NCBI RefSeq assembly: GCF_033153115.1 | Contig: NW_026889796.1 | Span: forward strand, 13,330,001-13,394,000 | Length of the DNA: 64,000 nucleotides | Direction: 5' to 3' | DNA from: Saccostrea echinata | Taxonomy: Eukaryota | In this document: one piece after another, positions 12,731-41,900 of the stretch | Layout: each line of letters begins with the position of its first letter | Numbering within the stretch: position 1 is the stretch's first letter | Program-made: the position numbers and the translations under genes | Notes under the pieces: generated by a model | What the model saw: only the letters and a program-made list of their open reading frames with translations | Database searches by the model: none | What the model was told of the DNA's origin: nothing

Positions 12731-15700
12731 GTGAGCAAAATTCTAATGATTTTAGATTTTAGGCGAGAAGTTTAACAACAGAGACCTGATTTGAACATTA
12801 CCATACATCCACAGAATTGTGGTGCGAGAGAATTTCAAAATATGTGTCAAAGGTAGGATACATTTGTGTAAATATATAATATACAAGGTAAGTCAAGTGT
12901 GCAAATACTGTAAACCAACTATTGTTCGTGTCATCTTGTATTCGTGAGTCGTCAATTTGAAATCAATCCGTGACGATTAATTTTCGCGACTGAGGAAACA
13001 TTCTCTACAAATAAATACAAGCAAAATAAATGGTTCGAAGCGATAATATTATTTGCGAGTTAACGTTGGTCGTGAAACTCAAGGATATTTGTCGCACTCT
13101 AATAAAAGTTGGTTTACAGTAGTTATATACAGTGCTGCAGTGTCCTTTTAGGCTCATCTGAGCTGAAGCCTCAAGTGAGCTTTTCTGATCGAAGGGTGTC
13201 CGGTGTTTCTCTGTGGTCTGTAAGCTTTTCAGATTTTCAACTTCTTCATATTTATGTGGAAGCATCCTCAGGTAGGGTAGATTCAAATTTGTTCAAATCA
13301 TGACCCCCCAGGGCTAGGGTAGGGACACATGGGCAATCAAATTTTTACGTAGGATGATAGCCATGATTAGTCTTTTTTTTACTCAGCTGAGCAAAGGCTC
13401 AAGGGAGCTTCCTGAATGAAATATGTATGGTGTCTATCATGTGTTGGCTTCAGCAGAACCACTGGGCCAAGTTCAATTAAACTTGTCCCAAAGCATCCTT
13501 GGGTGAAGGGGATTTAAATTTGTTTACATGAAGGGCCACACTCTCTTTTAAGGGAAGATAAATAAATTAAGAATTAGTGAAAATATAAAAGCATATCTTA
13601 AAAATCTTCTTCTCAAGAACCACTGTGCCAGAAAAGATGAAACTTTTGTGAAATTTTCATTACATAGTGTAGATTTAAGTTCAAATTATGACCCATGGAG
13701 ATGGGTAGGGCCACAATAGGGGATAAAAGTTTTACATAGGAATATAAAGGAAATATCTTTAAAAATCTTCTCAAGAAAAACAAAGCTATGATTAGTCAGA
13801 AAATGTGGAATCAATTTTGTTCAAATCATGACCCCAGGGGGTAGGGAGGTGCTACAATAGAAAATCAAACTTTCACATAGGTATTTATAGGAAAAAAATC
13901 TTTAACAGTCTTCTTAAGCCATGATCAGTCAAAGAAATATGGAAGCATCCTAAGTGTAGTTTCAAGTTTGTTCAAATCATGACCCTCTGAGGGGTAGGTT
14001 GGGACTACTTATATACCTAAACTTTTCAACAATGAATTGATTTTTTGCTTTTCTCTAGCAAAAGTGCTTAGGTGAGAGATGTGACACATGGGCCTCTTGT
14101 TCATGGTAGAATTGGTTCTTTCTGATAAGATCTTATTTAACAAAGTCTGCAAATCAGTTCTAATAGTCAAATATTGGGTTATTATTTGATTTCTTGGATA
14201 AATACTGGAAAAACTAGATCAATGTTATTGAAGGGACTGTTAATTTTTGTTGTTGCCTCATGCTACTGAAACAAAGGTTGCTATTGTTTCAGTAAGTTGT
14301 GGGTATCACAAAGACATCATTTTCTTGAATAAGAGGGTTAAAAAAAAAGAGTTGCTTTCTGACACCTCCACAAATATTTTATGTACCGGTATTGCATTGG
14401 TAGTGTGTAAAATTTCAAATATTTTGTTCTGTTTTACTTCAGTTTAATTTGCAGTTAGGCAAAAATAATTGACAGTGGTTGGAAAATAAAATTCATACTG
14501 TTTATTGCATAGAGATGTTTATAATATAATGCTAGGTTGAGAGATTCAACAGAAATATGTTTTACTTAGAGTTATCTCTCTTTGTCTTCCATACTGATCT
14601 ATAGGAGTAATATCTTTAATATAAACATGCTAGTACAGTTCTGTTTTCCTGGCATTTGATATTTTTCAGTGTACATGTATTAACTGTTTTATTAGTTTTA
14701 TGGAAGCAGATGTTGTACAGTTGGCCACTATACCATATATATACAATGTTAAACATTTTCCACTATACCATATATATACAATGTTAAACATTTTCCACTA
14801 TACCATATATATACAATGTTAAACATTTTCCACTATACCATATATATACAATGTTAAACATTTTCACTGTAAAAATGGCACAGATACTGTATTTTTGCTA
14901 AGTTCTCTGTTTTTTATATATCCGTAAAAAATCTCCAAACTCTTTGACATACTAGTAGGTGAAACGTACATAGTTTGTACTAGTAATTCACATGTATATC
15001 ATCAATTTTTGAAACTCAGATATCCAACTTAAAGATATTCATGATATGCGGAACAAATTATGAGGAGTAATTAATGGCTCTAAGCCATTAAAACTATTTT
15101 TAGTAATTTCGAACACATTTGAAGGTTTCCTTGTTCTTATATACCTTATTTATGCCGAGATTATAGGACACAAACAATTTATTTTTACATGTATAGTGTG
15201 TAATTTTTAAGGACAGCATAGGTCGTATAGAGAGGCTGTGTTTATACTACTTGTTTAGAGGAAGAGGTTTTCCTGTATTACGATCTTTGGTTGGGGGTAT
15301 CATCTAGAGCTGTATAAGAGGCTGGTCACCATCTCGAGTGTATCTCGAGGACGTTAATGGTAGGAGAATTTAGTGAGTAGGTGATGACTAGGTACCGCGT
15401 CAGTGGGAACTTCTCAGATAGGAGAATGGACAGACAGTCCGCGGACGTGTTGCTGCTTTCCATTCTAACTGATACTGTAAGTTGTGGAAATTTTGTGAAA
15501 TCTGAATGCATGATCTCTGGCATGTATCGCTTTCATCATAAAAAGCTTCCTTTGTATGTTGTTTTTGCCCTCTAAAAGAAAAGAAGGAGAAAGAGTAAGA
15601 TTTGAAGAGTTTTTTGAAGTGTTTATGTTTCCTGTAATGATATACACTTGTAAAATTGAAAAAAAAAAATTATTTTCTGGGTGAAGGAATTACAAGAAAG

Positions 15701-38927: not shown

Positions 38928-41900
38928 CCCTTTGATAAGATCTTGGGTAGTCAGCACCATAAAGTTTTTTTGCACAAAACTTTTATTATGATTGTAAAAA
39001 GCAAAGAATTGGTCTCCATGCTCCCAAATCATACATATGTACACTGTATATATATGTACATATATGTATGAAGCCAATGACAGAAATTTCCATTGGGATC
39101 TGCAATTAATTAAATGAATGATTGAGATTAATTAGGAGAGAGGGGAAATGGTATATTGGATTGGTAATACTTGTAAGAGGCACAAACTGGATTCAGATAT
39201 GTTTGCTTAAGAAATTATGATCATCTGTTATTTCAACAAGTAAGATAAAATACAGGATATGATGTACAGTTTGAGACTGTTATGATAGGATTAACAAAGG
39301 CTAGGATTAACACCTTTCTGTCTTGTGGTTATACACGTGATCTCAAAAACATTAACCTTCTAACAAAAACAGAACTGTTAAATACATTTAGTGTTTGTCA
39401 TGAAAGCTCAATTCTTCTTCTTCTTCTTTTAAAGTTATAATTAATATTATTACTTTTTAGTCAGTTTTAATTCAGTTTCAACATAGGTTTTGACACCACT
39501 GAACTAATCAAATATACTGGTGTCAAAACTTTTGACTAATCTTAGACTGCAGGGAGCCTGAACTGGTCAGGCCTGTAAACTACTCAGAATCTGTCACTTT
39601 CAGCCAAGAGCCATACTGTGATTGGTCAATTATAACTGTCCACTGAGAATAATTTGATCTGATTGGCTGAAGTGACAAACATGTTCCACCTCATTGGTTA
39701 AGCTAATTAATGTGTGAAAACATTGAATATTACATATGGAACAAGAAAATAATCTAATTATCGTCTCAAATTGATTTGTACTGATAAAGATCTCTATGTC
39801 ACTTTTTGGGTAATTGAATTCTGCCATGGAATCTAATATAAAGTTAGACCAAACCCTAAATTTCAGTATTAATGTAATTTTTATCAGTCTCTAAACATCT
39901 ATTCGTGAAGTGTAAGTATAAACCCCCAATATGTATTTGGACATTACTATCAAGAGATCAAGTGTAGAAAAACAGCAGCAATATGAGAGATTGTATCAGA
40001 GTACTCGAAGGAGGAAAAACAGGGGAGAGAATCTGGACAAATCTTTCAGCATCAGGAGACTCTCAAAAAGACTCAATAAATCTTTAATTGTTGGAAAACT
40101 GAATGCAGTAAGTGATATGAATTTGAGAGCATTATGGGGTTTGATAAAATATATATGCCAAATGATTTTTTAAGTCTCAGTATTTAATAAGTGAAATAAA
40201 TAATATATACATTTTTTGTTTTTCTTAAAATAAAAGAATTTTTTTTGCCAAGTTCTTATTTTTTTTTAATCATATTAATTAAAATGTTATTAATTAATTT
40301 CTTGAGAGATAATGTTTTTGAAGCATTAATTAGATGTAATATGGCAATTTTATAATCTTATTTTCATAGTATTAAGGATAATTAAACATAATTAAGGCAC
40401 TGTTATCACAAAATCTGTTATTCTTTAAATCTTTTATAAATGTATCCCAAGTTGCTTTCTTATGTAAGAGGATTATTTATAAACACTTATTCTTTTTAAG
40501 CTTTATTTAAAAAAAGCTGTTTTTTGTTTAGTTTACTGTCTTGACATGTCACAATATACATCATTAATGTAAAGTGACACTTCAGTATTTTTTATGTACT
40601 TGATTTTTTTTCCCATCAAAAGAACAGTAGCATGCTATTGTTTAATGATAATAACCTGCCCTAGCTGTGATCTTTACTGGTTCATTTAAAACTTGTGTAG
40701 CTGGATCTTTTCATTTGGGAGTCATAGTGTAATCAACTAAATGCACCTGAAATAAGGACATTGGATTAAACACCGAGTTATCATGCACCACGTCACCTGA
40801 TGGTTCAAAAGTGATTTTTATTTTCTGACTACTATAATCTGAGCTGACAGGAAGTTGAATTTTTTTTTTCCAACAAGGAAGTTAGTTTGGACAGAAAGAG
40901 TCCGAATTATTAACCTGCATCTTTACCAGAATTCAAAGATTTTTTTCTCGAAATCTGATCGATAAGGGTTTCCTCGGGGAATTTTTCATTAGAAAAATGA
41001 CTTGGAGCTCATTGTTTTAAGGACAGTGTGAGAGGGGTATGATGTTTTTGGGCAAGTCAGAAACTTTTACTCTTGGCCATGATGAATTGTCCGTTGGGAT
41101 ATTGTTTTCTCCCAGCGGTAGATACAAGAGGAGATGGGTAAGTTCATGATTTTAAAAAAAATTGAAAATAAAATACCCACATGGATATCATAGATGTCAA
41201 CCTTCACAATTAATTTTCGTTAGATTTTTCTTCTCTTAATAATGCAAGAGTATCTAAAGGCCATGACTCTATAAATTTCACTTTGATTTGGCCTAAACTG
41301 CAACCTTAAATTTCCAAATTATGGCTTTGTAACAGATAGTTTTTTTTTTTACCATGGACCATTGAAAAAAAACAAACTGGTTTCAGATTATATGAATTGA
41401 ATGATATCAATTGTTGAATTAGCCCCAATATTTTTTTGCTACAGATAGGATTTTGATTGAAAAAAGTCAAACTGGTTTCAGGTTATACATGTATTTCAGT
41501 TTGAATGACCTTGTTGAATTAGCCCTAATACCAATTGATTTATTATATTTTGATTGATAGGTATAAATCTTCAAATTTGATACACTACTCATTGAAATGC
41601 ACAACAACGACAAAAACAATAGCTGCTGGGGAATTGTTCCACTCTGCTTGTGCTGTTATCCACTTTGATTTTTTCTGTTCGTAATCAGATGATAGACTAG
41701 GCGACAATGGCTTCCAACACGTCCCTACTGTCTGGAAGCTAGAGCTGGCTTTTTAACCAGAAATGGCCTTCAGGCAGTTCACTGAAGATTTCTAATGATT
41801 TTGGATTGGGAAATCAGTGGCTATAAAAAGGAAAGGTTACACATGTAACAGTTGTTAAAAAGACAAGACTGTAATTTGTCTGCAGGGGAGATTCATTGAT

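What the first reader, a model, noticed from the sequence alone, without database searches (positions are those of the whole stretch)
15384..41137. Array of ~10 variable first exons feeding a constant RGS-RBD-GoLoco cassette
Seen in sequence: the two largest RGS12 introns (12731-32895 and 33004-42715) contain ten short ATG-initiated, stop-free frames. They lie at 15384, 17431, 19000, 24322, 28337, 32325, 34114, 38116, 39931 and 41039. Each ends at a GT donor in phase 0, the phase needed by the acceptors at 32896 and 42716. Most consensus G|GTRAGT donors I saw in these introns outside repeats belong to this set, and several sit in GC-richer islands. The encoded peptides (15-63 aa) are unrelated to each other. 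Established: mammalian RGS12 and Drosophila loco use a few alternative 5' ends, and variable-first-exon/constant-region designs are known from protocadherin, UGT1A and plectin loci. Inference: this gene may make about 11 N-terminal isoforms by promoter choice, replacing PDZ/PTB with short address tags. Caveat: I selected these frames by eye for phase 0, so some may be chance.
Basis: partly seen in the sequence, partly recalled or inferred. Interest (0 to 1): 0.85.

Follow-up and report, generated by a model that had tools for sequence, protein, structure and literature searches.

The report
Alternative first coding exons in oyster RGS12
An oyster RGS12/loco-type signalling gene carries, inside its two big introns, several short start-codon exons that replace the PDZ-PTB half of the protein with short N-terminal tags; at least five of the ten proposed are real, and the design is already known from fly loco and human RGS12.

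Summary
All ten ATG-initiated, stop-free frames exist at the stated coordinates and end at phase-0 GT donors. The excess is not chance. Of 21 GTRAGT sites on the + strand of the two introns, 6 carry a phase-0 ATG frame of 30 aa or more, against about 0.5 expected (P about 6e-6); phases 1 and 2 give 1 and 0.

Five candidates have independent support.
- 41039: an RNA contig of the same organism splices 41137 to 42716.
- 39931 and 28337: spliced Magallana gigas-like transcripts start with the same peptides and continue into the predicted constant exons.
- 32325: conserved in Pinctada. It matches the N-terminus of a Ruditapes RefSeq isoform joined to the 32896-type exon.
- 24322: 68% identical over 62 aa in Pinctada.

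Candidates 15384, 17431, 19000, 34114 and 38116 remain unsupported. The first two lie in CpG-retaining islands like validated ones. Promoter use is inferred, not shown. The peptides are unrelated, so this resembles loco or plectin, not protocadherin or UGT1A. It is a new member of a known kind, of moderate interest.

The parts
10415..12730 (+). First coding exon of the long isoform (Met at 10415; PDZ and PTB/PID domains), donor GTGAGC at 12731, phase 0
   Evidence: Pfam PDZ 1e-13 and PID 2.5e-7. tblastn of scallop P0004, Mytilus P0195 and Saccostrea P0175. Logan protein P0177 starts MYPHSGPQ at 10415.
15384..15476 (+). Candidate alternative first coding exon, 31 aa, donor act|GTAAGT; unsupported by RNA or homology
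   Evidence: Frame and donor. GC 0.50 and CpG o/e 0.75-0.89 island 15210-15534. Single copy in the genome. No homolog among fetched proteins. No relative in the metagenome scan.
17431..17541 (+). Candidate alternative first coding exon, 37 aa, weaker donor ttg|GTATGT; unsupported
   Evidence: GC 0.55 and CpG o/e about 1.0 island 17362-17596. Single copy. No homolog found.
19000..19044 (+). Candidate, 15 aa, donor cag|GTATGC; unsupported and short enough to be chance
   Evidence: Single copy. No homolog.
24322..24510 (+). Alternative N-terminal coding exon, 63 aa, weak donor aag|GTATAC; conserved coding sequence
   Evidence: 68% identity over 62 aa to Pinctada imbricata P0047 residues 13-75, E 9e-35, including the Met. 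CpG o/e 0.8 island. Single copy. Its splice partner in this species is not shown.
28337..28387 (+). Alternative first coding exon, 17 aa (MNFPRG...), donor aag|GTGAGT, joins 32896
   Evidence: The Magallana-like spliced transcript protein P0051 starts with a 17-aa MNFPRG... peptide followed directly by the 32896-exon peptide. Single copy. CpG o/e 0.8 island.
32325..32459 (+). Alternative first coding exon, 45 aa, donor agg|GTAAGT, joins 32896
   Evidence: 77% identity over 39 aa to Pinctada P0047, with the Met at the same position. Its last 18 aa match the whole 18-aa N-terminus of Ruditapes RGS12-like isoform X4 (P0043) and of Mactra P0042, which continue into the 32896-type exon (shuffle p 0.002). 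No usable phase-0 acceptor lies upstream. Single copy.
32896..33003 (+). Constant exon A, 36 aa, phase 0 at both ends; first shared acceptor
   Evidence: tblastn of P0004, P0049 and P0175. RNA contigs of X1 and X2 carry its 3' end fused to 42716 (loose ends, located).
34114..34206 (+). Candidate alternative first coding exon, 31 aa, donor ttg|GTAAGT; unsupported
   Evidence: Single copy. No homolog. Not covered by the one stretch that could be laid with reads.
38116..38181 (+). Candidate, 22 aa, donor cag|GTAGGT; the weakest of the ten
   Evidence: GC 0.32 and no CpG. No RNA contig on it in X1 or X2. Single copy. No homolog.
39931..40107 (+). Alternative first coding exon, 59 aa (MYLDIT...), donor gca|GTAAGT, joins 42716; old and conserved across bivalves
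   Evidence: Magallana-like spliced transcript proteins P0052 and P0179 start with this peptide (85% identity over 59 aa, E 1e-45) and continue directly into the 42716 exon. Mytilus P0195 and P0197 are 58% identical. Scallop P0164 starts MYLDIT. Single copy. An in-frame stop lies 4 codons upstream.
40907..41137 (+). Alternative first exon as seen in RNA (CDS 41039-41137, 33 aa), donor tgg|GTAAGT, spliced to 42716
   Evidence: X1 contig of 259 nt covers 40907-41136 plus 42715-42743; the joint skips 1578 nt, GT..AG. An X2 contig covers 40981-41140. Single copy.
42209..42304 (+). Unclaimed further candidate, 32 aa, donor atg|GTGAGT, phase 0
   Evidence: Found by the unbiased scan. RNA contigs 42087-42228 and 42225-42396 cover it but run through the donor unspliced. 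Single copy.
42716..42904 (+). Constant exon B, 63 aa, start of the RGS region; second shared acceptor
   Evidence: RNA contigs of X1 and X2, depth 21-27, with flanking joins. tblastn of many orthologs.
43324..50635 (+). Remaining constant exons: RGS, two RBDs, GoLoco and C-terminal tail
   Evidence: Pfam RGS, RBD x2 and GoLoco. Exon-by-exon tblastn.

Best explanation
The window holds the RGS12/loco ortholog of a Saccostrea-like oyster. The long isoform starts at 10415 and has the architecture PDZ-PTB-RGS-RBD-RBD-GoLoco. The gene also has a series of short alternative first coding exons inside the two large introns. Each carries its own ATG, has an in-frame stop a few codons upstream, and ends at a phase-0 donor. 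Those in the first intron join the phase-0 acceptor at 32896. Those in the second intron join the phase-0 acceptor at 42716. The products are RGS14-like proteins (RGS-RBD-RBD-GoLoco) that lack PDZ and PTB and differ only in a 17-63 aa N-terminal peptide. At least five such exons are real: 24322, 28337, 32325, 39931 and 41039. Statistics suggest one to three more among 15384, 34114 and 42209, and perhaps 17431. Shown here: the frames, the splice joint 41137->42716, and the use and conservation of the other four peptides in other bivalves. Inferred: that each exon is driven by its own intronic promoter, and that the peptides act as localisation or regulatory tags.
For: The domain architecture is confirmed by Pfam. 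The exon chain is confirmed by orthologs and by RNA contigs. An unbiased count finds 6 of 21 GTRAGT donors with a phase-0 ATG frame of 30 aa or more, against 0.48 expected (P 5.8e-6). Phases 1 and 2 give 1 and 0 (Fisher P 0.004). After removing the validated donors, 3 of 17 remain against 0.39 expected (P 0.006). A direct splice joint for 41039 is seen in RNA of the same organism. Magallana-like spliced transcripts P0052/P0179 and P0051 start with the 39931 and 28337 peptides and run into the predicted constant exons. Pinctada P0047 conserves the 24322 and 32325 peptides at 68% and 77%, with both Mets, and nothing else in the 30 kb of intron matches it. Ruditapes isoform X4 and the Mactra protein start with the 32325-type peptide joined to the 32896-type exon. 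All candidate regions are single copy, so none is a transposon fragment. No Rfam or tRNA gene explains the islands. Every candidate has an in-frame stop 2-24 codons before its ATG, so translation must start at that ATG. Low-depth RNA contigs lie in the 1.6 kb downstream of 40907 but not in the 4 kb upstream, which fits transcription starting there.
Against: Five of the ten candidates have no RNA or homology support. Candidate 38116 is AT-rich with no RNA contig, and candidate 19000 is only 15 aa. Four donors are non-consensus. No TSS evidence exists. A T-rich tract followed by AG about 30 nt upstream of the 40907 contig end could be an acceptor, so 41039 might be an internal exon. The Pinctada gene model chains the 24322-type and 32325-type exons in one protein. 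The only RNA data for this organism are two small sets of assembled contigs, and only 36950-42920 could be laid.
Confidence: 0.8

Rival explanations
1. The exons are real but are not promoter-specific first exons. They are alternatively included internal exons of transcripts that start at the upstream promoter. Because each has an in-frame stop before its ATG, inclusion would truncate the PDZ-PTB protein (poison exon, NMD) or require re-initiation.
For: An acceptor-like T-tract followed by AG lies about 30 nt upstream of the 5' end of the 41039 RNA contig. Mytilus models P0195 and P0197 and the Pinctada model P0047 place 39931-type and 32325-type exons internally.
Against: The 41039 contig carries no upstream exon. 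Magallana-like transcript ORFs P0051 and P0052 and Ruditapes isoform X4 begin at these Mets. The Mets are conserved. 32325 has no usable phase-0 acceptor upstream. Several exons sit in CpG-retaining islands. Intronic RNA contigs occur only downstream of 40907. The Mytilus and Pinctada models are genome predictions of unknown RNA support.
Confidence: 0.12
2. The five unsupported candidates (15384, 17431, 19000, 34114, 38116) are chance ATG frames next to GT dinucleotides that the reader picked by eye. The true array has about five or six variable exons.
For: About 20% of any GT sites have some ATG frame upstream in a given phase: 65, 45 and 49 of 180 G|GTR sites. Three of the five have non-consensus donors. 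No homolog was found among 200 fetched bivalve and other proteins. No RNA contig lies on 38116.
Against: After removing validated donors there is still an excess of strong donors with long phase-0 ATG frames (3 of 17, P 0.006). 15384 and 17431 sit in the only CpG o/e >0.7 islands of intron 1 other than those of validated 24322 and 28337 and one more at 31121. The protein collections searched were clustered and length-limited, so absence is weak evidence.
Confidence: 0.35
3. 24322 and 32325 are two exons of one alternative transcript (one promoter, two exons) rather than two independent first exons.
For: The Pinctada model P0047 contains both in series, separated by a 22-aa linker.
Against: The linker has no counterpart in the window. 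The Met of the 32325 exon is conserved in position. The heterodont isoforms start inside this exon. The only phase-0 AG before the conserved part (32329/32330) lacks a pyrimidine tract.
Confidence: 0.15

Closest known systems
Drosophila loco (the fly RGS12 ortholog) transcripts c1-c5
   Same: This is the same gene family with the same design. The last exons are common to all transcripts, and alternative 5' exons give five transcripts, some lacking PDZ/PTB (PMC2324087).
   Different: The oyster gene has at least six N-termini (the long form plus five) and perhaps up to about a dozen. It uses two shared acceptors rather than one. One variable exon (MYLDIT...) is conserved across bivalve orders.
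Human RGS12 splice variants, including the C-terminal RGS12(667-1447) form, and the paralog RGS14
   Same: Short forms consist of RGS-RBD-RBD-GoLoco without PDZ/PTB, arranged as in RGS14. Numerous 5' variants are reported (PMC12919419, citing Chatterjee and Fisher 2000 and Snow et al. 1998).
   Different: The oyster N-terminal peptides have no detectable similarity to vertebrate ones. The number of candidate 5' exons is larger.
Plectin-type multiple alternative first coding exons (recalled from general knowledge, not tested here)
   Same: Many short, mutually unrelated first coding exons each splice to a common exon and give isoform-specific N-terminal tags.
   Different: It is a different gene family. 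Promoter-specific use and tag function are documented for plectin but not for this locus.
Protocadherin and UGT1A variable-exon clusters
   Same: There is a series of 5' exons and a constant 3' region.
   Different: In those clusters the variable exons are tandem paralogs that encode whole domains. Here the peptides are 15-63 aa and unrelated to each other, so this is not that kind of array.

Membership tests
RGS12/loco (R12) subfamily of RGS proteins | PDZ and PTB/PID domains in the long form | tested here: met
   Pfam PDZ 1e-13 and PID 2.5e-7 in 10388-12730.
RGS12/loco (R12) subfamily of RGS proteins | RGS domain followed by tandem Raf-like RBDs and a GoLoco motif | tested here: met
   Pfam RGS (1e-16), RBD (2e-16 and 1e-7) and GoLoco (1e-7) in exons from 43324 to 50635. 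Orthologs are named RGS12 or loco-like.
Alternative first coding exon architecture (loco or plectin type) | Several exons, each with its own ATG and donor, upstream of shared exons | tested here: met
   Ten claimed and two unclaimed frames. The excess over chance has P 5.8e-6.
Alternative first coding exon architecture (loco or plectin type) | Each variable exon is spliced to the common acceptor in mRNA | tested here: met
   Met for 41039 in the same organism. Met for 39931 and 28337 in Magallana-like transcripts and for 32325 in Ruditapes isoform X4. Not tested for the other six.
Alternative first coding exon architecture (loco or plectin type) | Each variable exon has its own transcription start or promoter | tested here: inconclusive
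   No TSS data exist. Indirect evidence: the contig ends at 40907 with no upstream exon, intronic RNA lies only downstream of it, and four exons sit in CpG-retaining islands.
Protocadherin or UGT1A-type variable-exon cluster | Variable exons are tandem paralogs of one another | tested here: not met
   All-against-all local alignments with shuffling give a best p of 0.017 among 66 pairs, which is no similarity.

The most novel reading that the evidence does not exclude
Nearly all of the twelve frames (the ten claimed plus 42209 and 31285) are promoter-specific first exons. On this reading, one bivalve RGS12 gene makes a dozen N-terminally tagged RGS14-like isoforms from an intronic promoter array that has been partly conserved since the bivalve radiation. 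That would be a much larger 5' repertoire than fly loco or human RGS12.
Probability: 0.15. Interest if true: 0.55.

Novelty: new member of a known kind. Interest (0 to 1): 0.38.

Why it matters
The result shows that short, unannotated-looking ATG frames in oyster introns can be real coding first exons. Current models of this gene in relatives appear to be fused, chained or truncated: a low-quality Saccostrea model, a chained Pinctada model and a Magallana model without a Met. It also shows that the split into a long PDZ-PTB form and short RGS14-like forms, known from flies and mammals, is present and elaborated in bivalves. At least one N-terminal tag (MYLDIT...) is conserved across oysters, mussels and scallops, which makes that tag worth testing for a localisation role. 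It does not reveal a new kind of gene organisation.

Tried and rejected
Orthologous loci, such as the 14.9-kb Logan contig behind P0209, could not be fetched, and no DNA-level conservation or dN/dS could be computed.
- The look-up of sequencing runs gave only two small contig sets, X1 and X2. They are labelled 'RNA?' but contain spliced joins.
- Read laying allowed one stretch of at most 6 kb.
- Metagenome scans found no relative with the 15384 ORF or the 42716 exon.
- A protein search with the 42716 exon returned only genomic read-through ORF fragments, with no junction information.
- Pfam on nine peptides and the ESM Atlas on the 24322 peptide gave nothing usable.
- Rfam and tRNA scans of both introns were empty.
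- A 10-kb own-genome search was swamped by one high-copy repeat, so candidates were searched one by one.
- The transposon-fragment explanation is rejected, because all eleven regions are single copy.
- A Tegillarca N-terminus ending in RRW resembles the end of the 41039 peptide, but only three residues align. It is not counted as support.
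Full report
**The gene**

The window is G000:C47:13330001-13394000 of a 923-Mb genome. On the + strand lies an RGS12/loco-type gene.
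- The 781-codon exon ending at 12730 carries PDZ and PTB/PID domains.
- Exons from 43324 to 50635 carry RGS, two Raf-like RBDs and a GoLoco motif.
- Exon-by-exon tblastn of a scallop long isoform (P0004, 1670 aa) gives the chain 10439-12703, 32896-33003, 42716-42904, 43318... to 50635.
- The closest named protein is Saccostrea cucullata XP_062613035.1 (P0175), 94-98% identical across most exons (lower in a few local alignments), so the organism is a Saccostrea-like oyster.

RNA contigs of the same organism carry the 3' end of exon 32896-33003 fused to 42716, and carry 42904 fused to 43324. Exon 42716 ends at 42904. Both shared acceptors are phase 0.

**Observation**

All ten ATGs, their stop-free frames and their phase-0 GT donors are present as described.
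- Six donors are GTRAGT. Four are weaker: 17542 GTATGT, 19045 GTATGC, 24511 GTATAC and 38182 GTAGGT.
- Each frame has an in-frame stop 2-24 codons upstream of its ATG, so none can be an in-frame internal coding exon.
- The candidate exons are GC-richer (0.32-0.55) than the introns (0.31-0.33).

**Is it chance?**

There are 21 sites.
- Phase-0 ATG frames of 30 aa or more occur at six of them: 15477, 32460, 34207, 40108, 41138 and an unclaimed one at 42305.
- Phases 1 and 2 at the same sites give one and none.
- Dinucleotide shuffles give a rate of 0.025 per site and phase.
- Shuffles of the local 300 nt, which keep local GC, expect 0.48 in total. The binomial P is 5.8e-6, and for frames of 15 aa or more it is 7 observed against 1.5 expected, P 5e-4.
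- Fisher's test of phase 0 against phases 1 and 2 gives P 0.004.

The pattern as a set is real, although any single short frame could still be chance. Among loosely defined donors, 25-36% have some ATG frame in any phase.

**RNA of the same organism**

Only two small public contig sets were offered (X1 and X2). They contain spliced joins, so they derive from RNA. I laid them on 36950-42920, the one stretch allowed.
- X1 has a 259-nt contig covering 40907-41136 and 42715-42743, with a GT..AG joint that skips 1578 nt. This is exactly donor 41138 to acceptor 42716.
- The contig carries no upstream exon.
- Low-depth unspliced contigs lie at 40981-41140, 41581-41767 and 42087-42396. None lies in the 4 kb upstream (36950-40900) apart from short partial matches of contigs that mostly lie elsewhere. 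This fits transcription starting near 40900, but it is an inference.
- No contig lies on 38116-38181 or 39931-40107 in these two samples. Contigs show presence, not absence.

**Other bivalves**

Protein searches and cluster look-ups gave spliced, transcript-derived proteins. Over 271 aa they are 100% identical to the Magallana gigas UniProt entry A0A8W8MP22.
- **39931.** P0052 and P0179 begin with a 59-aa peptide 85% identical to the 39931 frame (E 1e-45) and continue directly into the 42716 exon. The peptide type is old. Mytilus coruscus models carry it at 58% identity, a scallop loco-like protein (P0164) starts MYLDIT, and unionid short forms have related starts.
- **28337.** P0051 begins with a 17-aa MNFPRG... 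peptide followed by the 32896 exon, matching the 28337 frame.
- **24322 and 32325.** Pinctada imbricata P0047 contains a stretch 68% identical over 62 aa to the 24322 peptide (E 9e-35) and a stretch 77% identical over 39 aa to the 32325 peptide (E 6e-25). Both Mets are at the same positions. Nothing else in 30 kb of intron matches it.
- **32325, second line.** The last 18 aa of the 32325 peptide align without gaps to the entire 18-aa N-terminus of Ruditapes philippinarum RGS12-like isoform X4 (P0043) and of a Mactra protein (P0042). Both continue into the 32896-type exon (shuffle p 0.002).

For 24322 the partner is not shown. The Pinctada model chains it to the 32325-type exon through a 22-aa linker that has no counterpart here, and the window has no credible phase-0 acceptor before 32325.

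**The unsupported five and extra candidates**

Candidates 15384, 17431, 19000, 34114 and 38116 found no homolog among about 200 fetched proteins. They could not be tested with reads.
- After removing the validated GTRAGT donors, 3 of the remaining 17 still have long phase-0 ATG frames (15477, 34207, 42305) against 0.39 expected (P 0.006). Some of these are probably real.
- In intron 1, GC islands with CpG o/e above 0.7 are few. They coincide with 15384, 17431, 24322 and 28337, plus one unclaimed island at 31121-31345 that holds an 18-aa ATG frame ending at tcc|GTAAGA.
- 38116 is AT-rich, CpG-free and has a weak donor. 19000 is only 15 aa. These two are the least convincing.
- My rough odds that each is a real exon: 15384 about 0.55, 17431 about 0.45, 34114 about 0.45, 19000 about 0.3, 38116 about 0.15, 42209 about 0.3.

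**What they are not**

- All eleven candidate regions are single copy in the genome, so they are not transposon fragments.
- There are no Rfam families or tRNAs in the introns.
- The peptides have no Pfam match and no similarity to each other.

**Mechanism**

- Shown: alternative ATG exons in the introns splice to one of two phase-0 acceptors. They give proteins that lack PDZ and PTB and begin with a short variable peptide followed by RGS-RBD-RBD-GoLoco.
- Inferred: each exon is driven by its own intronic promoter, and the peptides serve as localisation or regulatory tags.
- The main rival for the validated exons is inclusion as internal exons of transcripts from the upstream promoter. An acceptor-like T-tract plus AG lies about 30 nt upstream of the 40907 contig end. 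The conserved Mets, the transcript ORFs that start at them, and the RNA contig pattern speak against this rival.

**Comparison with known systems**

- Drosophila loco, the fly ortholog, has common 3' exons and alternative 5' exons that give five transcripts (PMC2324087).
- Human RGS12 has numerous splice variants, including an RGS14-like C-terminal form, RGS12(667-1447) (PMC12919419).
- The oyster locus is the same design with more variable exons and two acceptors.
- It is not a protocadherin or UGT1A-type cluster, because the exons are not paralogs.
- No paper on bivalve RGS12 isoforms was found.
- Database models of this gene in relatives look imperfect. The Saccostrea model is a low-quality fusion with 442 foreign N-terminal residues. 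The Magallana UniProt model lacks a Met. The Pinctada model chains two Met-initiated exon types that are used as first exons in other bivalves.

**Limits**

- Both metagenome scans were empty.
- Only one 6-kb stretch could be laid with reads.

**Verdict**

It is unproven for the rest and for promoter choice. This is a new member of a known kind, of moderate interest.

Noticed in passing
window 36746-36969: A short interspersed repeat of about 180-220 bp has at least 40 copies at 85-91% identity across many contigs of the genome (4985 first-look candidates for the 10-kb query). It is SINE- or MITE-like.
   Followed up: no
window 35944-36189: A tandem repeat of a 122-nt unit (2 copies, 87% matches) contains the two G|GTAAGT sites at 35988 and 36110. 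This explains two strong 'donors' that lack an ATG frame.
   Followed up: partly
The first is covered by unspliced low-depth RNA contigs. The second lies in a CpG-retaining island (31121-31345).
   Followed up: partly
P0175 (Saccostrea cucullata XP_062613035.1) against window 10409-50635: The RefSeq model of the ortholog in the closest named species is a 2151-aa 'LOW QUALITY PROTEIN'. Its first 442 residues do not match this window, so it probably fuses an upstream gene to RGS12.
   Followed up: no
P0164, P0066, P0067 (scallops); P0048, P0053, P0160-P0163 (unionids): In scallops the MYLDIT-type N-terminus heads a separate short 'loco-like' protein that lies on a different contig from the long RGS12/loco gene. 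Unionid mussels have several such short proteins. The oyster alternative exon may correspond to a stand-alone paralog elsewhere.
   Followed up: no
window 23018-23094 and 14725-14865: There is a perfect (TA)38 microsatellite and a perfect 4-copy 35-nt tandem repeat inside intron 1.
   Followed up: no
window 40790-40880: Upstream of the 5' end of the 41039 RNA contig lie a CRE-like ACGTCA, a TATAAT and two GGAAGT (ETS-like) motifs. This is suggestive of a promoter but was not tested against background.
   Followed up: no
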